64,000 nt of DNA from Guillardia theta CCMP2712 (GCF_000315625.1 NW_005434643.1:190212-254211); one strand, 5' to 3'. Positions 50,301-64,000 are shown, numbered from the stretch's first letter. Notes: generated by a model from the sequence alone, not told the origin. Made by a program: numbers and translations.

Positions 50301-53300
50301 GCTGACAGCCCCACCCCGCGAGCCTTCGCTGGCGTCCTCTCAGTGGATGCGGCGGTGCTGGTCATGTACGGGGGCGAGCAGGACAGGAAGGGGCTGCACC
50401 AGCTTTGGCAGCTCGACCTCACCTCGCAAACATGGCGCATGCTTGGGCTGACCTCGTCCAACTCCTCCTTCGGCCCCAGGCTGTTGTCGGCGATGTCCTT
50501 GTTCAAGCTCCAGGCCTCCTCCTCTCACGCCTTCATCGTTCACGGCGGGATCAAGACCTCGTACGAGGATGGCAAGACGTTCATGTCAGGTGAGGGACAG
50601 GAACATCAGCCCACGAGCGACGCGATGCTGTTTGTTGAGACCTCGGAGCAATCCTACAGCGTCACCAGGTTGCGACTTGACATGACCGGACGACAACCTG
50701 CAGCTCGATGCTTGCACTCCATGCTGACCGGCCGATTCGTCTCCTCGAGCAACGACCTGGTGCTGCTCGGAGGAGTGAACAGGGAGGGGAAGGCAATGGC
50801 AGACATGTGGTACATCGAGAGCAGCGAGCAGAGGAGGTTCGCCAAGCTTGTCTTCGTCCTCGACCAGCTGAGCCCAACGACGCTGCTGGGAGCTCAGACC
50901 GACTTGCTGATGCTCATCAACACGTGCGCCACAGTCAGAGCCCCGGCCGTCACCTCGTCAGACCTCAGGGTCCAGCTGAGAGGGAGTACGTCAACTGAAG
51001 TCCAGCTGGAGGTGGAGGAGGGTCAGCTTCTGTGTCTGCTGCAGGCGTGGAGAGACGGAGAGGGGTGGAGGGAGTCTGTCGCAGCTCTCGAGCGATCCCT
51101 CGCAAGACCCTCATGGCTCCGCAACGCCTCTTGGTCCCCCGTCAACGGCAGGGCCTCCGAATTTGACGCGCAGGCTCTCAACGGCTACATCGCGTACGGG
51201 CTGACAGGCCTGGGCGTCAATGCCTACGAGTTTGACGTGAAGGTGTCATGCGAGCGATCGAACATGTCGGCAAGTGAGTGAGAGGCTGACGGCTGCTCGT
51301 TTCAGTCTTGTGCTGCCTGCTCTGACCCCTCACTCTGCTGCCTGCTCTGACCCCTCACTCTGCTGCCTGCTCTGACCCCTCACTCTGCCGCCTGCTCTGA
51401 CCCCTCACTCTGCCGCTTGCTCTGACCCCTCACTCTGCCGCCTGCTCTGACCCCTCACTCTGCTGCCTGCTCTGACCCCTCACTCTGCCGCCTGCTCTGA
51501 CCCCTCACTCTGCCGCCTGCTCTGACCCCTCACTCTGCCGCCTGCTCTGACCCCTCACTCTGCCGCCTGCTCTGACCCCTCACTCTGCTGCCTGCTCTGA
51601 CCCCTCACTCTGCCGCCTGCTCTGACCCCTCACTCTGCTGCCTGCTCTGACCCCTCACTCTGCCGCCTGCTCTGACCCCTCACTCTGCCGCCTGCTCTGA
51701 CCCCTCACTCTGCCGCTTGCTCTGACCCCTCACTCTGCCGCTTGCTCTGACCCCTCACTCTGCCGCCTGCTCTGACCCCTCACTCTGCCGCCTGCTTTCA
51801 CTCCTTCACCCTACAGGATGCCTGCGAGGCGTTTGCCAACAACGCAATCAGAGTGGAGGAGCAAGTCCGACCGTTTACTGCGGCAACGTCTCCTCTCCCT
51901 CTGCCTGCCCTCAAGGGCTCGTCTGCTCTCTGCCGCGACCTCGGCATGGGCATCAGTCGGTTGCTCTGGCGATGGACGACAAGGTTTGAGCCTGGAGAGG
52001 GCGAGGAGCGGAGCTGACGGGCCTGCAGGATGTCTTGCTGACGTTCGGAGGTCAGGAGTCAGACCTCGTCACGAGTCAAGGATGGAAGTTGAGCAACGCG
52101 GTGACCTCAGTCTCCTTCAGCTACAACGATGCCACCTCAGTCAACCTCTTGACGTCCTGCGACCTTGACTTGACCTGCCCGCCGCCAAGGAGAGACGCAA
52201 CCGTTCGCATCATGGACAGCGAGGGGGGAGCGAACGGCAAGCTCCTCGTCTTCGGTGGGATGGGATGTCAGAGCCAAGAGTGCGGGCAGTCAGGGTTCCA
52301 AGACTTTCTTGCTGGTCGTTCCTCCTCTTCTGCCGTCCTCTACGACGATCTATGGTGCTGCTGCTGCCTCTCCCACGAGTTATACCTGACAAGCCCCAAG
52401 GTACCTCGACCTCCAAGACCTCACCATGGAGTGTGTCACCACAGGAGATTGCCGGGCGTTCTTGCCATGGACGAAGGTGAGGAGAGGACGGAGAGGATGC
52501 GGAAGAGAGCGATGCTACTCTAGAGTTTTCACACAAACCTGCCAGGTGGAGGTGGCAGGGAGCAAACCTGCGGCTAGGTTTGCCGGCGGAGGGATCGTCG
52601 ACACATCTGACAACGAGCTGTACTTATTTGTGAGTAAGGGAGGTGCTTATGAGAACAAGGAGAGAAATGCAGGAGGTTGGCGAGTGTCTGAGTAGGAGGC
52701 GAGTGTGAGGATGGGGATGAAGAGGAAGGAGGAGGAGGAGGAGGGGGAGGAGAAGGAACTGATGGGTATCAGGGAGGAGTAACTTACGAGGGCTCTACCT
52801 TCCGCGAGCTCTCGGACCTCAACGAGTTCGCTCTTGCCGATCCCTTCTACAAGTTCTGCAGTGCGACCGGACAAGGACTGACAGGAGCCGTTGCTGGCGT
52901 CACCTCAAAGATTTTCCTTCAGTGCCAGGTTGATCTTCTTTCCTCCTCTCTCTTGTCTTCTCCCTCCTTTTTAAAGCATTTGTTGTCGTCTCATCCTTCC
53001 TCTCCTCTCATAGGACAGCTTCCGACGCCCAGCTGACGGCGCGAGGTTCCGCGTGGAGCTTGTGAGTGCTGGATCTCCCTCCCTTACTATCTCCCCTGTC
53101 GGGCTCGGGCAGGGGATGTACGAGGGGTCCTATACACCAGTGAAGTCGGGGTCGTATTTGCTCAAAATCTACGTGGGGAGAGGAGGCGTGCAGCATCAGA
53201 ACCTGATCGAGGGCTACGACAAGAATCCCTCCAACAGCATCCATGAGTTCGAGCTCCTCGGCAACCGCAGCAACCAGAACCCCTTCTCCCTCCTCGTGGC

Positions 53301-54709: not shown

Positions 54710-54820
54710 AGTTGGGTGTGATGCCCCGCACGAGCAGGATGAGGGATACCTTGACGATGCAGAGTTTGTCGCATGCTCAGCCGGACAAGGGAAGGAAGAC
54801 TCGATCTCGATTGTGGTATC

Positions 54821-55005
54821 TCATCAGTGCTTGTTTCTCATCAGTGCTTGTTTCTCATCAGCGCTTGTTTCTCATCAGCGCTTGTTTCTCATCAGTGCTT
54901 GTTTCTCATCAGTGCTTGTTTCTCATCAGTGCTTGTTTCTCATCAGCGCTTGTTTCTCATCAGTGCTTGTTTCTCATCAGTGCTTGTTTCTCATCAGTGC
55001 TTGTT
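54821..55005. repeat. 17-bp minisatellite TCATCAGYGCTTGTTTC, about 11 copies
   Basis: Head-to-tail copies. Confidence 0.95.
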
Positions 55006-55242: not shown

Positions 55243-55424
55243 AGCTAACTCGCTATTCTTACATCTTCGACCTGTACATGAGCGCTAGATCGCTATTCTG
55301 ACATCTTCGACCTGTACATAAACGCTAGATCGCTATTCTGCCATCTTCAACTCCTACATGAGCGCTAGATCGCTGTTCTGCCATCTTCAACTCCTACATG
55401 AACGCTAGATCGCTGTTCTGACAT
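55243..55424. repeat. 40-bp tandem repeat (GCTAGATCGCTATTCTGACATCTTCGACCTGTACATGAGC-like), about 4.5 copies
   Basis: Imperfect head-to-tail copies. Confidence 0.9.
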
Positions 55425-55771: not shown

Positions 55772-57275
55772 ATGTCAACTCGAAAGTTGTAATGCACATT
55801 TGACCGGCATCATTCCTCCTAATACGTGCAGCAGGTCGTCTTTACTTCTTGTATGCATATGTACCTTCAACTTCCCTCTTTCCGTCTCGTTCTTGCCCGC
55901 TGGGCCTCCTTCTCCTAGCAAGTTCTTGCAAGCAAGTCAAGCGCGGGCAACTTTACAGCAGAGCATCAGACGGGCGGGATGTGTGCGAATGGTGGGAATG
56001 GACAAGAAGGACAAAGACGGGCGGAGAGGAGCCAACCTCTTGCGGCTCTTCTTCCGACCTGACAAGGACAGAAACGAGGCTCCGCATCCCTCAAACGGCA
56101 TCTTGGTCGGAGACCTCGGAGACCTTCGCGGTCGTTCGACTCAGATCGAGTCGTTCTTCAGTAAGCATCGGGCGAACAAATCTCCCAACGGAGCCTCCGA
56201 TGAATACTTGTCGTCCTTGTACAGGTTCACAGACGATGGCAGACGACTTTCCTCAATCTCCAGGTATGCAGACGACTACTGGAGCACCAACTTGCTCACC
56301 ATCTTTCGCTCTCGCGTCTTCAAGAGGATCTTTCCTCGCCTGGTGGTGAACTTTCTTGTGTGCTCGGGAATTGCTGTCCTCTACGCCTTGTCGCCTCTTA
56401 CGTTCCCAGCCGCTCACGGCCACGCTCACACCATCACGGGATCATTCCTGGGGCTGCTGATTGCGTTCAGGACCAACACAGGGTACGAGAGGTACTGGGA
56501 AGCTCGAAAAGCCTGGGGAGCAGTGCACAAGCGTTGCCGATCCATGGCGGTTCTGCTAGCAACGTCAGTGACAGAGGTCGATCATATCGTCTTGAGGGTT
56601 TTCCAGATTCTCACGGCCTATCCCTACGCGCTTAAGCAGCACCTGCGAGGACAGCACAGCATGGTGGAGCTCTCAAAGATGCTACCTAAGGAGGACATCA
56701 AGCAGCTTGAGAAGGCTCAAAACATGCCCCTGCACCTCTGCATGCTGCTGTCCTCTGCTATCTCCCCTCTGCTTAACTCACCCAAGGTGACGATGAACCT
56801 CGTGTGGGAGAGAGCAGAGCAACACATCCAGGAGCTGAACAAGGTGATCACAATCACGGAGAGGCTGGCGACAACTCCCGTCCCTCTCTCCTACTCTCGT
56901 CACACCTCGAGGTTTCTCTCCATCTGGACTCTCACGGCTCCCATCTACCTCGTGCCTCAGTGCGGCCCCCTGCTGGCGGTGATCTCGCATCCTCTCATTT
57001 GTTGGGCTCTCTTCGGCTCTGAGGAAGTAGGACATATCATCGAGGAACCGTTCGGGACTCCCGGCGACAGCAGGTTTCTCAAAGAGGGACCAGGAGGCAT
57101 TCGGTTCACAGAAAACCTTCCCCTCCTTCGCTACTGCGAGCAGATCAAGCGCGACATCGAAGCCGTCGAGAGACTATGGCAGTCACTGCCATCTACAGCT
57201 CCTCAATGCCTCATACCCATCGGATCATGTGACGTCGACGATCCCGACTGTCAAGCAGGAGTGGTGAGCTTTTAA
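55772..57275 (+). CDS. bestrophin-like anion channel (VCCN/BST, UPF0187 family), probably plastid-targeted
   Basis: LGLLIAFRTNTGYERYWEARKAWG, ERLATTPVPLSYSRHTSRFL, EEVGHIIEEPF; signal peptide ending SVS-F plus transit-like region; probable ATG at 55772 in a mini-exon. Confidence 0.9.
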
Positions 57276-57476: not shown

Positions 57477-58050
57477 TTACTTGCCATCCACGTGCTCCAA
57501 GGCCTCGAGGAACAAGAGCTCTTGGTAATCCTTGAGGTGCACAAAAGAAAGTGCGTTGTTGTATTTGCTCTGCTGTGCGGGTCCAGTGCTCTCTTGGCTC
57601 TGGGTGTTGATAAAGCTCTTGAGATCTTGGCTCTCCATCTCGTCGTCGGATGTTTCCGAGTCACTCGGAGCAGTCTGCTGGTCGACATTTGCTTTCTTGT
57701 CATCTTTCATCAAGCAAAGATCGCCAACTTGCTTTCGTTTCCTTGAGTATGGCCACCTGGCCAATCCCAACATTCTGCAGGAACTCTTCAAGCTCGTGAG
57801 GGAAATGCCCTGCAAGAACAAAACATGAGTGTGGGTTCGCATGGAAAGAAATGATTCTGATTCTTACCAGGTACTTTGCAGCATCAGATTGTCGCATAAC
57901 AAAGAGTTCGGATATGTCGTCGACAGTCAAATTCACTATCGATTTTCCTTCCGGTTCTCTATCAGAGTATTTTGCTCTCGGCGCAATGCTGATGATCTTC
58001 GATTCTTTTTGTCCGATCCTCATTTCACTTGAAGGTAGCCCAAAGTTCAT
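57477..58050 (-). CDS. RWP-RK domain transcription factor, two exons; start uncertain
   Basis: LTVDDISELFVMRQSDAAKYL/GISLTSLKSSCRMLGLARWPYSRK joined by a GT-AG intron. Confidence 0.85.
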
Positions 58051-58225: not shown

Positions 58226-58919
58226 GCTGCAGGAGGAGTGAGGTGAAAGAAAATCGTGCGATGAGAAAGGCAATTGAGAACCCCAGCATACAAACCCCCA
58301 ATGACCTGTAGTAAAACCTCAAAAAGAGAGCCTTTCAAATAACCGGCGTGTTGTAACCCTGGTGAAGAGGGCAAGAAGTCGATATGAACCCCTCCATATG
58401 AAGGGAAAAGAAGGGGTAGACAGAATGTTGGTCAGAATTGGACATGAAAAGGTTTGATACACTATTATAGGTTTTATACAATAATACATATGTCTTATTA
58501 AAATAGTTTTCTCGAATTAACTGTGTAAGGGGACATTCATGGATGCCAGCAATTGTCTGTAGTAAGAGATCGTTGCGATAAATTGTTTTTAGCCGAACTT
58601 TGTGAGGGTCAGCTGCAGACCAAAATATTTCTTTTCGTCACGATGTCCGAGTTTGGGTGCATGTCACTGTCAGGGGATATGGAGGTCAAATCCAAGAAGT
58701 CGGGTGGATTGCCTGCGTAGCCCTGGAACTTGCCGGAATCGAGGCGGTGGGGGTAGGAATGCATGACGAAATCAAATATGCGTTACAAATAACGGTCATG
58801 ACAAGGAAGCGGACCTCTGTCATCTTCATGTGTAGTAAACCTCATTGAAATGGGTAGTAAATATGATAATAATCTCCAATCCGTGTATTCAAGTTTGGGG
58901 AAGAGGACTGGACGCTACT

Positions 58920-60090
58920 AACCGCCTGCCGGGCGGGCCGGCGGGCCGCCGGCCCTGAATGTCCGACCGTGTCACGGCGACGGTCCGCCGCGGCCGGGGG
59001 CCGCAAGTTGGCCCTCACGGGGGCAGTGTACTCCGCGTGCCGCGGCGCGGCGCGCAGCGGCGCCCGCCACTGCCGTCCGAGCAGTGCCGCAGTCACGCCC
59101 GGCCGCGGGTCGCACTAGCCGCCGCTGAGCCCGGGGCCCGGGCTGGCAGTGGCGCGGCGCCGCCAGGCGCGGCCGGCCGGGCCCGCCCCTCGGATGGCGA
59201 CCCCGTTGGCCCCTGGCTCCGAGCGGCTCCGCCGGGAGTCCGACATCCGATGATCGGACAGTGCCACGGTGAGCCTGGAGTCACTCGCCGCCGGGCCGAG
59301 TCCCGGCGACCGGGAGTCCGGCGGGCCGGGGCCCTGAGTACCGGCCGGGCGGCGTCACAGTACCGTACTACGGTACGGCCGGGCCGCGGCGGTCCGGCGT
59401 CGGACACCGTGCCGCCGCGGCCTCCAGTCCCGGCGCCCGGAGTCGGAGCCCCGGTGAGTCCGAGGCTCAGCAGCCATACTGGCTGTGACAGGCTGGGCCC
59501 GGCGCCCACGGCGGGCCGGCGAGGCACCGCCGGTCCGATCACCCGGTGACCCGGGCCGGGCCGCCGGCGGCCGCTCAGCCGCCGGCCGCCCCGGGCCGCC
59601 GGGGCCCGCCGCCGGGGGGACCCCGGGGGGGGGGGGGGCGCGGGCGGCGGCCGGGCCCGGCCGGCGGGCCCGGCGAGTCCGGGGCCTAAGCCTTTCCGAA
59701 GTTCGGACGGCCGCGGACTTCAAGGCTTGGCACGGGCCGCTGAGTGCGGCCGCGCGCGGCCCGCCGGGCCGCGCCGCCGCGGCCGGGCCCGGCGCTCCGG
59801 CGCCTCGCTGACTCGCCTCCCGGCTCCGTTCTGGCCGCCGGTCGCGACGGCGGGGGCCCCCCGGGCCCGGGCCGGGGTGAACTAACTTTCAACAGTTGCG
59901 GCCCGGGCGGCCCGGCGGCGTCACAGTCACAGGCGGCAGTGGCGGTCCGATCACCGCCCGGCCGCCGCTCACTCACGCGGCGTGGTGCCTCGGGAAGGGG
60001 CCCGGTGCCTCGGGAAGGGGCCCGAGGCTTGGCCGCGGCGAAGTTGAGGAGCCCGGCGGCCCGGCCGGGTCCGACGGGCCGTCAGCCGCT
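58920..60090. other. GC-rich intergenic island between divergent RWP-RK and TrhO-fusion genes
   Basis: Extreme GC/CpG, poly-G run, TACCC-rich flank at 60140-60235. Confidence 0.7.
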
Positions 60091-60305
60091 CTGTTCGTGG
60101 TTGTCAGCTGCTGTGCATGGCTGTGGCCCCCGAAATTCGATCCATCCGTTCCCTACCCCCACCCTCTCTTTGATACCACCCCCACCCCTTAAACTCGACC
60201 TGTACCCATCTCCTTATCCCACCCCTACCCACCTAATTAGTAAGATCACAAGTTCATCAGCACATGCACTTCACGTAATGAGAGAAACCTTGTTGATATA
60301 CCTTG

Positions 60306-60450
60306 CACTCATACACTCATACACTCATACACTCATACACTCATACACTCATACACTCATACACTCATACACTCATACACTCATACACTCATACACTCAT
60401 ACACTCATACACTCATACACTCATACACTCATACACTCATACACTCATAC
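60306..60450. repeat. (CACTCATA)n, about 18 copies
   Basis: Perfect 8-bp tandem repeat. Confidence 0.95.
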
Positions 60451-60668
60451 GCCCATACACTTCGACACATACTGAGTCTGTGACAGAGTTTGTAATTGAA
60501 ACAGGAACAGTTTTTTGTGCAAGATAGCAGCAGCACATGCAGCAGTAGCAGTAGCATAAGGAGCTTTTGCATAATCAGCACAATATTCAGCGGGAATGGG
60601 TGTGAGGGACATTGATGTGTGTGTGCACTGAGATTCAAAGCATAATTACTGACTTTTATGTTTGCAGC

Positions 60669-63600
60669 ATGCTTCACAGGCTAAACAAATGCCATGTGTA
60701 CTTCGGGCTGCTTGCGTTGAGTCTTTTAGGAAGCGTCCTTGCATTTGCTCCCACGCAGCCATGGTCACCACCAAGCATGGCTGAGCCCCAGAGACTCGCA
60801 CGGTTCTCCTCGACGCTTCAGAGAATCCGAGTAGGGCTCTCAAGAAACCCTCGCGTCACCTTGCGATGTGCAGCAGTAGATGTCGATCTTCGTAACAAGG
60901 AGAGAAGAGAGAAGAACCTCGAGATCGCAAGGAGGGTGGCAATCGGAGAGCTTCGCCCCATCGTCGTCTCCTTCTCTCCAGCTTTCAGAAAGGAGCTGAA
61001 GCTTGCCAAGCGGTTCAAACACACGAGGCTCTTTCTAGAGCTAGAAGAGCTCCAGTCACTCCGAGCCTTGAAGCAAGCTCTCATCCGCGAGCTGCCGCAT
61101 CCTCTTGCCTCCTTGCCGGAAGACGCTTATCGACTAGCGGTGCGTCCCACGCAGGCGATGGGGTCAGTAGACAATGTGGAGGAGGAGGAAGAGGAGGTTG
61201 ATGAAGGGCAAGACCGAGGGGACGAGGAGGGGAACCTGCTGTTTGTCGAGACAGACGAGGAGCTCGTGCGATTGTTCGCAGAAGCTCAGCAGGTGAGGAG
61301 CTCTGGCATCGGAAAGCTTCGCCTGCAAGTCGTGGACACCGCCGGCTTCTCAGCGTACCTGGAGGAGAAGCGAGGATACGCCATCGCTGCTGACGGCGCT
61401 CTTCCTAACGGCCTCAGGCCTGAGGAGGCCGAGCAGTGGATCATGGTCTCCTTCTACCGCCTGCATCCCTTACAAGACCCCGAGGACCTCGCACGCAGGC
61501 TGCGAGCAGCTTGGGAACCCCTGGGGGTGCTGGGACGCGTCTACGTAGCAAGAGAAGGAATCAACGCGCAGGTGTCTGTCCCCGACAACATGCTCGAGCT
61601 GTTCAAGCAGACTGTCACCGCCCACAGCGAGCTCGACGGCGTATACTTGAACTGCGACGAGCCTCTCAGCAAGGAGTACGCTCCTTTCAGCAAGCTGCAG
61701 ATCAAACCTCGCAAGCACGTGCTAGCCGATGGCCTTCCAAGGTCTCTCGACTGGAGAGAAAATGGTGCGAAGTTGTCGCCAGCAGAGTGGCACTCCAAGG
61801 TAGAGCAGCTGAACAAGGAGGAGGAGGGCGCGAAGCCGATCCTGATCGACATCCGCAACTTCTACGAGAGCGAGGTCGGACTGTTCAAGGGGGCAAAGGC
61901 GCTGGACACGGTGACGTTCAGAGACACGTGGGATGCGCTGAAGGAGACGCTCAAGGGGGTGAGCAAGGAGAAGGAGATTCTGACCTACTGCACGGGTGGA
62001 ATCCGATGCGAGAAGGCCAACGCCTACATCATCCAGGAGTTGGGCTACAAGAACGTGAGCGCTCTGAGAGGAGGGATAGTCAACTACGCGCAATACGTGA
62101 AAGAGAAACAGTTGAGGTGAGGACGAGGGAGAGAGAGGGAGGAGGAGGCAGAGTGAGGCGAGTAACTCGAGCAGGTCGCAGTTCTTGGGAGTGAATCACG
62201 TATTCGACCAGCGGCTCGGACAGCGAGTGGGAGAAGAAGTTCTCTCAAGGTGAGAGAGGGTTGACGAAAGGATAGGAAAGCCAGAAGAAGGGATACGGGT
62301 GTCGGAGAGGAGTGGGGAGGAGCATCAGACGTGCGCTGATATGGTTCTCTCAGATGCATCAACTGCGGTTGCTCATCGGACGTGCAGACTGACTGTGCCA
62401 ACACTCACTGCCCTCGTCCCTTCGCTCGTCGCCGGTACATCCAGTGTCAGGAGTGTGCGATCCGGCAAGACGGCTGCTGCTGCTCTGAATGTGCGGACGA
62501 GAAGAAAGCGAGGGAACAGCGAGACGAGACTCAACGAAGACTCGAGGAGCTGCAGGTGTCCCTTCGCAGAGAATTGCGATCGCGAAAGAAATCCAAAGAC
62601 ACGGCGGCGGAAGCAGCGGAGGAGGAGGAGCAACGACTCGCGGCCTTGTGAGGAGGACCTGCTGTGTCTGCTGGCTAATAGGAAGCAGGTCGGAGGGCAG
62701 GATAGCTCGGCTTGAAGGTGAGGTGGTGGTGACGAGAAAGAAGCTCGAGGAAGAAGAAAAGGCGCTGGAGGTGAGGAAGAAGCAAACGAGCTGCTTCTTC
62801 TCACCTGCTGCAGGCTTGCCATGCTAAGTCGCTGGTGGCAATTTCACGCTTGGGTTTGCTGCCCAACGGGTAACGATGCTCCTTGTCTACCCTTGTAACT
62901 CAATCACGCAGAGAGTTCTCGGAGTTCGAGGAGGAGGAAGGGAGAAGCAAATCCGAGGAGCCGAGCGATGCAGGTAGCGAGCTTGTGCGTGGGAGGAGAA
63001 GCTGAAGAGATGACAGATAGAGGAGCGAGGACGCTGGACGAGAGGAACCACCTAGGACAAGAGCATGATCTGAACGCTAGTACTGCCTCCCCTCCTTCTC
63101 TCCTCTCCTCCTCACCCATCGATGCCATCAGAGTACGCGGAGGAGCACTCGTCGGCGGAGCATCCTTACCTCCAGCGAGTGCGAGAGGAGACAGCCAGGG
63201 CTCTGCCTCAACGAGCGCACATGATGAGCGGAGTCGTGCAGGCCAAGTTCATTGCAAGCTTGATCGCTATGATGAACGCCAAGCAGGTGAACCAAACTCA
63301 ATGCCTCCTCTTTCACCACCTCCTCCTCCCCCGCCTCCTCCTCTTCCTCCTCCGCAGCCCCATCCCAACCTCTCCTTCCCCTCCACCTCTCGCTTCCCCC
63401 CTCCTCTTTCTCGCAATCCTGCTCCCCCACCGATGTTGGACTCCTTCGAGCGCATCAGCAGGTGCTCGAGCTCGGCTGCTTCACAGGATACACGGCCTTG
63501 TGCATGGCCGCAGCTGTCGGGGAGGAGGGGAAGGTGACAAGCCTGGAGCGAGACTGCGAGGTCGCGGCCATAGCGAAGAACAACATCGAGATGTGCCCTT

Positions 63601-64000
63601 GGTGACCGCACAGCAAGAGGAGGCGAGGGAGGGAGGCGAGTCTGACTGGAGGCAGGGGGAAGCGGGTGGAGCTCATTCAAGGAGACGCGCTGGACGTGCT
63701 GGATGAGCTGACGGGCACGAGGACGAGAGAATTCGACCTCATCTTCCTCGATGCAAACAAGAAGCAGTACAGCACCTACTTCACGCGCATCATGGAGAAA
63801 GAGCTGCTGAGAGTAGGAGGGGTAAGAAGGAGGAGGGAGGAGCTGTAGGGTGACAAGAGAGCAGGTGCTCGTGGTGGACAACACATTATGGAAAGGGAGA
63901 GTCGCGGAGCTCTACAGCCTATCGCAGACGGAGGTGATGATTCTTCTTCTCACGCTGGTCTGACTGGCGAGCAGAGGGTGGAGAGGAACAAGGAGCTGCA
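60669..64000 (+). CDS. plastid-targeted TrhO-type rhodanese (tRNA U34 hydroxylase) fused to a Methyltransf_3 (TrmR/CCoAOMT-like) O-methyltransferase; 3' truncated
   Basis: SFYRL, GRVYVAREGINAQ, DIRNFYESEVGLFKGA, YCTGGIRCEKA, LRGGIVNY, Cys-rich tail; then VLELGCFTGYTA, FDLIFLDANKKQY, VDNTLWKGRV; all junctions are GT-AG and in phase. Confidence 0.85.

What the first reader, a model, noticed from the sequence alone, without database searches (positions are those of the whole stretch)
60669..64000. Candidate single-polypeptide tRNA wobble-modification pathway (U34->ho5U->mo5U) for the plastid: TrhO fused to a TrmR-family O-methyltransferase
Seen: the ORF track suggests two genes, but the apparent stop at 62649-62651 lies inside a GTGAGG donor. 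Canonical introns give one unbroken frame over exons 60669-62116, 62175-62249, 62354-62647, 62689-62770, 62814-62869, 62912-62973, 63017-63079, 63132-63286, 63462-63601, 63656-63821 and 63865 onward. The linker reads ..QRLAAL-SEGRIARLEGEVVVTRKKLEEEEKALE-ACHAKSLVAISRLGLLPNG-EFSEFEEEEGRSKSEEPSDA-DRGARTLDERNHLGQEHDLNA-KYAEEHSSAEHPYLQRVREET, and all five linker junctions match in phase. The N-terminus is a signal peptide ending VLA|FAP followed by an Arg/Ser-rich transit peptide. Established: bacterial TrhO (YceA family, YCTGGIRCE motif) hydroxylates tRNA U34 to ho5U using O2; Bacillus TrmR (YrrM), a CCoAOMT-like SAM O-methyltransferase, converts ho5U to mo5U; A|FAP-type presequences mark import into complex plastids. 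Inference: the fusion couples the two consecutive steps and makes mo5U34 in plastid tRNAs, extending wobble decoding. I know of no description of this in an algal organelle.
Basis: partly seen in the sequence, partly recalled or inferred. Interest (0 to 1): 0.93.

Follow-up and report, generated by a model that had tools for sequence, protein, structure and literature searches.

The report
Plastid TrhO–methyltransferase fusion, cryptophyte copy
One real, spliced gene in the alga Guillardia theta joins a tRNA-hydroxylating enzyme to a methyltransferase and carries a chloroplast address. It probably makes a bacterial-type tRNA wobble modification inside the chloroplast, but the same fusion was already reported in a diatom and in oomycetes in 2019.

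Summary
The gene model is confirmed. The window is Guillardia theta. RNA contigs from two studies each carry every junction, including the one that removes the 62649 'stop'. One begins with the cryptomonad spliced leader 1 nt before the ATG. The protein is about 927 aa; NCBI splits it in two.

The N-terminal half is a TrhO: it passes the NCBIfam cut-off and keeps all essential residues. The fusion is not new: Sakai 2019 reported it in Phytophthora and Phaeodactylum. This scan noted a similar fusion elsewhere in this genome (s1-433742, unchecked).

The methyltransferase is not a TrmR orthologue on trees or by diagnostic arginines. It does keep a basic helix where TrmR binds tRNA (44/46 fusions vs 5/15 nearest bacterial relatives).

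I found no report of the following: the fusions form one eukaryotic clade with two forms. The long form, with a PB1-like domain, occurs mainly in red-plastid algae. The short form, with mitochondrial-type leaders, occurs in plastid-less protists.

Most likely it makes mo5U34 in plastid tRNAs (about 0.55); this is untested. Verdict: new member of a known kind.

The parts
60666..60667 (+). AG acceptor for spliced-leader trans-splicing; 1-nt 5' UTR follows
   Evidence: X1 contig has 16 extra 5' letters equal to the G. theta spliced leader, absent from the window
60669..60743 (+). Signal-peptide-like segment, aa 1-25, ending ..VLA
   Evidence: Hydrophobic core, KD 11-residue max 2.4; no SignalP available
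60744..60875 (+). Transit-peptide-like segment starting F26 (7 R/K, 1 D/E, 8 S/T in 44 aa)
   Evidence: F at +1 also in Hanusia P0002, P0003, P0007; ASAFind rule in PMC4329603
60876..61433 (+).
   Evidence: Pfam PB1 only weak (E 0.015); AF2 pLDDT 85; best VIA Z 8.2/8.1 to PB1 domains; in 73 of 112 fusions
61440..61721 (+). TrhO UPF0176_N domain; includes the K (61704-61706) and R (61710-61712) matching E. coli K112/R114
   Evidence: Pfam PF17773 E 5.5e-20; alignment to E. coli TrhO
61803..62090 (+). TrhO rhodanese domain with active-site loop YCTGGIRC at 61986-62009
   Evidence: PF00581 E 6.9e-12; NCBIfam TrhO NF001133 173.9 bits vs cut-off 170
60669..62116 (+). Exon 1 (coding part)
62175..62249 (+). 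Exon 2 (TrhO ..VFDQR motif)
62354..62647 (+). Exon 3 (Cys-rich Rhodanese_C region and start of coiled linker)
62648..62688 (+). Intron 3, 41 nt, contains the false stop 62649-62651 used by the NCBI 350-aa model
   Evidence: Joint 62647-62689 in X1 and X3; NCBI split models
62689..63079 (+). Linker exons 4-7 (62689-62770, 62814-62869, 62912-62973, 63017-63079), charged and poorly conserved
   Evidence: end of exon 7 matches second cryptophyte fusion P0175
63132..63286 (+). Exon 8, start of O-methyltransferase domain
   Evidence: PF01596 E 1.9e-06; RNA
63462..63601 (+). Exon 9, SAM-binding motif; acidic residue + Arg matching TrmR E85/R86, Val at TrmR R90
63656..63821 (+). Exon 10, D-x-x-K motif (TrmR D133/K136)
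   Evidence: PF01596 E 3.1e-12
63865..63933 (+). Exon 11, DN metal-site motif (TrmR D159/N160)
63934..63974 (+).
   Evidence: Joint in X1, X3 and 19 raw reads of X19
63975..64000 (+). Start of exon 12 (basic helix insert). It runs on to window-equivalent 64075, and a last exon lies at 64347-64419; both extensions are predicted from scaffold locus L095, not RNA-checked

Best explanation
One nuclear gene makes a trans-spliced mRNA for a ~927-aa protein (mRNA shown to the window edge; the last ~60 codons are predicted). A signal peptide plus an F-starting transit peptide take the protein into the plastid stroma (inferred from sequence). There the TrhO domain uses O2 to hydroxylate U34 of the family-box tRNAs to ho5U (inferred from an intact TrhO). 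The tethered class I O-methyltransferase then transfers a methyl group from SAM to the new 5-hydroxyl, giving mo5U34 (the least certain step). The methyltransferase is not descended from Firmicutes TrmR. It comes from a neighbouring PF01596 branch and appears to have its own basic helix at the place where TrmR grips the anticodon loop. The modification would help single UNN tRNAs for Ala, Pro, Thr and Val read whole codon boxes. The family appears to descend from one early eukaryotic fusion: a short form with mitochondrial-type leaders in plastid-less protists, and a long form with an added PB1-like domain spread with red-algal plastids.
For: Single transcript. TrhO: NF001133 above cut-off; C200/T201/G203/R205 and K112/R114 equivalents intact. 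The fusion is kept across red algae, cryptophytes, ochrophytes, oomycetes, Plasmodiophora, Protostelium and a choanoflagellate. TrhO halves form one clade (SH 100) and methyltransferase halves one clade (91/91), so the link is old and has been maintained. Metal/catalytic residues D, K, DN are intact. K/R at TrmR position 178 or 181 is found in 44/46 de-replicated fusions vs 5/15 nearest bacterial homologues; net charge of that helix is +2.8 vs -0.7; G. theta has K at 181. The cryptophyte plastid tRNA table lists only UNN tRNAs for Ala, Pro and Thr, and trnV(GAC) only in Chroomonas (PMC5534331). mo5U is present in Synechocystis RNA (PMC12860351). The cryptophyte clade sits with red algae (SH 87).
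Against: There are no biochemical data, and I found no report of mo5U in organelle tRNA in the papers searched; chloroplasts and mitochondria are described as using unmodified U34 (PMC11571807). The fused domain is closer to small-molecule O-methyltransferases than to TrmR: a red-algal fused domain gives E 1e-38 to 1e-23 to 3tr6/SafC/SynOMT/COMTD1/CCoAOMT vs 3e-12 to TrmR 5zw3; VIA Z 28.7 and 28.2 vs 24.8. TrmR R90 is present in 1% of fusions. No trhO lies within 10 kb of the 80 nearest prokaryotic methyltransferases. The basic-helix statistic is not independent of shared ancestry. Some members of the clade have lost or lack the methyltransferase (P0009; G. theta paralogue P0019). Targeting was judged by eye, without SignalP/ASAFind.
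Confidence: 0.55

Rival explanations
1. The TrhO half makes ho5U34 in plastid tRNA, but the methyltransferase half acts on a small catechol or phenolic substrate, or mainly serves as a dimerisation module. The fusion then does not couple two steps on tRNA.
For: Nearest solved relatives are small-molecule cation-dependent O-methyltransferases. The domain lies outside the TrmR clade. R90 and R178 are absent in G. theta. Ryu 2018 estimate that TrmR orthologues are only about 3% of PF01596.
Against: The fusion is retained across several supergroups with both halves monophyletic. The added basic helix sits at the TrmR RNA-binding site. The AU test does not reject grouping with TrmR (p 0.215).
Confidence: 0.2
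2. The chemistry is the same (mo5U34) but the site differs: the periplastid compartment (nucleomorph tRNAs), the mitochondrion, or both organelles.
For: Short-form fusions in plastid-less lineages have Arg-rich, acid-poor N-termini. Several algal N-termini are ambiguous. Low-confidence ASAFind-type prediction has specificity 0.88 in G. theta.
Against: The spliced leader fixes the AUG directly before the hydrophobic signal. F at +1 is conserved in four cryptophyte sequences, which is the stromal signature. The red-algal affinity fits a plastid protein.
Confidence: 0.12
3. The pair works as a hydroxylase plus methyltransferase on something other than tRNA U34, such as an organellar rRNA base or a small aromatic metabolite.
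For: No eukaryotic TrhO homologue has a shown function; human TSTD2 is uncharacterised (PMC10135228). There is an extra PB1-like domain of unknown role.
Against: The tRNA-binding K112/R114 and the whole catalytic loop are conserved, with 36% identity over 302 aa to E. coli TrhO. The equivalog cut-off is passed.
Confidence: 0.11
4. There are two separate genes, as NCBI annotates (350 aa and 139 aa), and the fusion is a prediction artefact.
For: NCBI models; an in-frame TGA if intron 3 is retained.
Against: Single RNA contigs with all joints from two studies; the colinear 913-aa cryptophyte-like fusion P0175.
Confidence: 0.02

Closest known systems
yceA(trhO)-'trmR' fusion genes of Phytophthora sojae, P. 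ramorum and Phaeodactylum tricornutum (Sakai et al. 2019, PMC6599085, Fig. 3b)
   Same: Same domain order. P. sojae P0364 and P. ramorum P0365 match the G. theta TrhO and methyltransferase exons; other oomycete fusions fall in the same TrhO and methyltransferase clades.
   Different: The paper gives no localisation, activity or phylogeny, and its table scores G. theta as lacking both genes. The G. theta copy has a bipartite plastid presequence and a PB1-like domain absent from the oomycete forms.
Bacterial TrhO (YceA/YbfQ; NCBIfam NF001133)
   Same: UPF0176_N + rhodanese + Cys-rich C-terminus; CTGGIR loop; K112/R114; 36% identical to E. coli TrhO, 41-46% to the nearest bacterial hits.
   Different: Nuclear-encoded, intron-rich, organelle-targeted and fused. 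Alphaproteobacterial TrhO hits are more distant (27-31%).
TrmR (YrrM) of Bacillus subtilis, PDB 5ZW3/5ZW4 (Ryu et al. 2018, PMC6158493)
   Same: PF01596 class I fold (Z 24.8); D133, K136, D159, N160 and R86 equivalents; a basic helix after the DN motif.
   Different: A separate clade; R90 and R178 are not conserved in G. theta; the DN-to-FN segment averages 47 aa vs 27; the nearest bacterial kin of the fused domain are not beside trhO.
CCoAOMT-like / COMTD1-like cation-dependent O-methyltransferases (3TR6, SafC, SynOMT, COMTD1) and uncharacterised Bacteroidota homologues
   Same: Closest by sequence and fold.
   Different: The nearest bacterial homologues mostly lack the long basic helix insert; the characterised members act on small catechols (own knowledge and PMC6158493).

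Membership tests
TrhO (YceA) | Score above the NCBIfam equivalog cut-off | tested here: met
   NF001133 173.9 vs 170 bits with exon 1 alone
TrhO (YceA) | UPF0176_N + Rhodanese + Rhodanese_C order | tested here: met
   (Rhodanese_C weak because split by introns); precomputed on P0005
TrhO (YceA) | Essential C200, T201, G203, R205, K112, R114 | tested here: met
TrhO (YceA) | O2-dependent U34 hydroxylation | not testable with these tools
   Needs an assay
TrmR orthologues | PF01596 fold with D133/K136/D159/N160 | tested here: met
   shared with most class I O-methyltransferases, so not diagnostic
TrmR orthologues | Diagnostic R86, R90, R178 (PMC6158493) | tested here: not met
   G. theta: R86 yes, R90 Val, R178 Ala, K at 181; fusions: 32%, 1%, 67% K/R
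TrmR orthologues | About 40% identity / E about 1e-41 to B. subtilis TrmR | tested here: not met
   Red-algal fused domain vs 5zw3 E 2.6e-12; model of P0175 domain 28% identity
TrmR orthologues | One clade with syntenic TrmR genes | tested here: inconclusive
   ML tree separates them by branches at 99/96, 99/93 and 100/97, but the AU test does not reject a joint clade, p 0.215; P0175 stood in for G. theta
TrmR orthologues | Methylates ho5U in tRNA | not testable with these tools
   Needs an assay
Eukaryotic trhO-'trmR' fusion (Sakai 2019) | TrhO and PF01596 in one ORF, homologous to the Phytophthora genes | tested here: met
Nucleus-encoded stromal proteins of red complex plastids | Signal peptide followed by F/W/Y/L and a basic transit peptide | tested here: met
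   By inspection and composition; SignalP/ASAFind scores not available
Nucleus-encoded stromal proteins of red complex plastids | Import into the stroma | not testable with these tools
   Needs GFP fusion or proteomics

The most novel reading that the evidence does not exclude
Plastids of the red lineage, and mitochondria of several plastid-less protists, carry mo5U34. It is made by one ancient eukaryotic TrhO fusion whose methyltransferase is a non-orthologous replacement for TrmR that gained its own tRNA-binding basic helix. This would overturn the general statement that organelles read four-codon boxes with unmodified U34, and would give the first function for any eukaryotic TrhO homologue.
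Probability: 0.45. Interest if true: 0.72.

Novelty: new member of a known kind. Interest (0 to 1): 0.48.

Why it matters
Sakai 2019 left open whether eukaryotes have xo5U-type wobble modifications, and no eukaryotic TrhO has a shown function in the papers searched. This gene gives a clean test: a verified transcript, a defined compartment, a defined set of four plastid tRNAs and bacterial mutants to complement. It also corrects a split annotation in the G. theta reference genome. If the methyltransferase works on tRNA, ho5U methylation arose in more than one PF01596 branch, which affects how 'TrmR' is annotated outside Firmicutes. The fusion itself, and its link to the mo5U pathway, are published.

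Tried and rejected
P0005 (TrhO half) and P0175 (a 913-aa cryptophyte-like fusion, 37-88% identical exon by exon) stood in for it.

Raw run X19 covers only the 3' end.

Searches that led nowhere: a cis-encoded 5' exon for the 16-nt leader (no match; it is the spliced leader); bacterial TrhO-methyltransferase fusions (none; Sakai's 'three bacterial species' are the three eukaryotes); trhO next to the nearest bacterial methyltransferases (none; one weak rhodanese-like hit in L040); a TrmR model in NCBIfam (none listed); a methyltransferase beside the paralogue GUITHDRAFT_149366 (none in L103); the second fusion reported in s1-433742 (not found in my searches); Rfam on the window (0 hits); ESM Atlas for the N-terminal domain (only leads under 0.9, all ubiquitin-like or unnamed). 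An L-INS-i alignment timed out, and the 100-row careful tree did not finish (quick tree used).

Rejected: two separate genes; strict TrmR orthology; a plastid-only or cryptophyte-only innovation.

Full report
Source and gene model. Exon 1 matches GUITHDRAFT_70716 of Guillardia theta CCMP2712 at 100%, and the window equals scaffold JH992995.1 over 8558 nt without mismatch. NCBI calls two genes here, a 350-aa TrhO ending at the TGA 62649-62651 and a 139-aa methyltransferase. RNA settles the point. Contigs from runs X1 and X3 (different studies and years) each hold all ten named joints in one record, the genomic-type run X12 holds none, and raw reads of X19 confirm the two 3' joints. X1 begins with 16 letters that are not in the window and equal the G. 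theta spliced leader (PMC5619915). They are joined at AG 60666-60667, one base before the ATG. From the scaffold, two further exon stretches beyond the window close the frame at 927 aa; these are predicted, not RNA-checked. The joined model was not sent to any search; exons were searched apart.

Anatomy. Residues 1-25 are signal-peptide-like. Residue 26 is F and the next 44 residues are basic and Ser/Thr-rich; the F is conserved in Hanusia and two other cryptophyte sequences. This is the stromal signature for red complex plastids (PMC4329603). It folds with confidence (pLDDT 85) into a PB1/ubiquitin-like domain (best Z 8.2; that Z shows a common fold, not a function). The TrhO half passes the NCBIfam equivalog cut-off and keeps every residue shown essential in E. 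coli. After a charged linker comes a PF01596 O-methyltransferase with intact SAM motif, D-x-x-K and DN.

Prior art. Sakai et al. 2019 state that yceA and trmR are fused in Phytophthora sojae, P. ramorum and Phaeodactylum tricornutum, and suggest xo5U-type modification in eukaryotes. They never mention plastids, and their table scores G. theta as lacking both genes. Searches of the paper library found nothing further on the fusion or on mo5U in organelles; the library lacks most subscription papers. I had found the Sakai passage before seeing that note and could not locate the second locus.

Distribution. I found 112 fusion sequences and more oomycetes. Named hosts are Rhodosorus, Cyanidiococcus, Epithemia, Chattonella, Phaeothamnion, Ochromonas, many oomycetes, Plasmodiophora, Protostelium and Salpingoeca kvevrii. 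No bacterial fusion appeared. The TrhO halves form one eukaryotic clade (SH 100). In it the cryptophyte sequences group with red algae (SH 87, moderate), together with a G. theta paralogue that has no methyltransferase nearby. There are two forms. The long form has the PB1-like domain (73 of 112) and is seen in red-plastid algae and one choanoflagellate. The short form lacks it and occurs in plastid-less protists, often with Arg-rich, acid-poor N-termini of mitochondrial type. Many sequences are unnamed or 5'-truncated, so the split is a pattern rather than a proof.

Is the second half TrmR? Not by descent, on the evidence here. By sequence and fold it is nearer to 3TR6, SafC, SynOMT, COMTD1 and CCoAOMT than to 5ZW3. 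I collected five TrmR genes by synteny with mltG (three also beside U32 genes) plus a Fusobacterium TrmR-like sequence. The fused domains form a clade (91/91) among Bacteroidota, Acidobacteria and other homologues, separated from TrmR by three strongly supported branches. An AU test on a quick tree does not reject a joint clade (p 0.215). Of the three arginines that Ryu et al. call TrmR-specific, G. theta has only R86. None of the 80 nearest prokaryotic homologues lies beside trhO. But 'works like TrmR' has support. TrmR binds the anticodon loop with R178 and R181 on the helix after the DN motif. The fused domains carry K or R at one of these positions in 44 of 46 sequences below 50% identity, against 5 of 15 nearest bacterial homologues, with net charge +2.8 versus -0.7 over that stretch. 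G. theta has K at 181 and a basic run just upstream. Shared ancestry inflates this count.

Mechanism. Shown: one mRNA to the window edge, one frame, intact motifs in both halves, an old conserved fusion. Inferred: stromal import; O2-dependent ho5U34 formation; SAM-dependent methylation to mo5U34. The need exists. The cryptophyte plastid tRNA table lists only UNN anticodons for Ala, Pro and Thr, and for Val outside Chroomonas (PMC5534331); these are the boxes that xo5U serves in bacteria. Synechocystis RNA contains mo5U (PMC12860351). Against this, organelles are generally described as reading these boxes with unmodified U34 (PMC11571807). I put the full model at 0.55, hydroxylation without tRNA methylation at 0.2, another compartment at 0.12, another substrate at 0.11.

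Verdict. The fusion is a new member of a published kind. The unpublished parts, as far as I could search, are the plastid address, the two-form distribution, the PB1-like domain and the non-TrmR origin of the methyltransferase. They make a stated open question directly testable but are not yet a discovery. Interest 0.48.

Noticed in passing
window 55800-57275 (+): Intronless bestrophin gene (PF25539, E 3e-60); its N-terminus looks like a signal peptide followed by F, so it may be another plastid protein.
   Followed up: partly
window 57477-58023 (-): NCBI-called RWP-RK domain gene, 162 aa.
   Followed up: no
window 58900-60100: CpG-rich island of 77-89% GC with no called gene, just upstream of the fusion gene, in a ~52% GC background.
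   Followed up: no
window 60306-60461, 51311-51796, 54819-55005, 55250-55424: Near-perfect tandem arrays with periods 8 (19.5 copies), 25 (19.4), 17 (11) and 40 (4.4).
   Followed up: no
L103:3083-7608 (P0019, GUITHDRAFT_149366): Second G. theta TrhO from a cryptophyte duplication; no methyltransferase within 5 kb downstream; relatives P0010 and P0013 have signal-like N-termini.
   Followed up: partly
P0182-P0187, P0191, P0194, P0195: Proteins with two tandem O-methyltransferase domains and no TrhO; those placed in trees nest inside the fused-domain clade and keep the basic helix.
   Followed up: partly
P0138: The choanoflagellate Salpingoeca kvevrii has the long algal form; either transfer from an alga or contamination.
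   Followed up: no
P0357 and P0388: Pythium insidiosum has the fusion and a TrhO-only paralogue with consecutive locus tags.
   Followed up: no
P0009: The Tribonema long form has no PF01596 hit at the C-terminus, suggesting decay of the methyltransferase.
   Followed up: no
P0133-P0137, P0145, P0146: Unrelated fusions of a pyruvate-kinase-family domain (PF00224) with a PF01596 methyltransferase.
   Followed up: no
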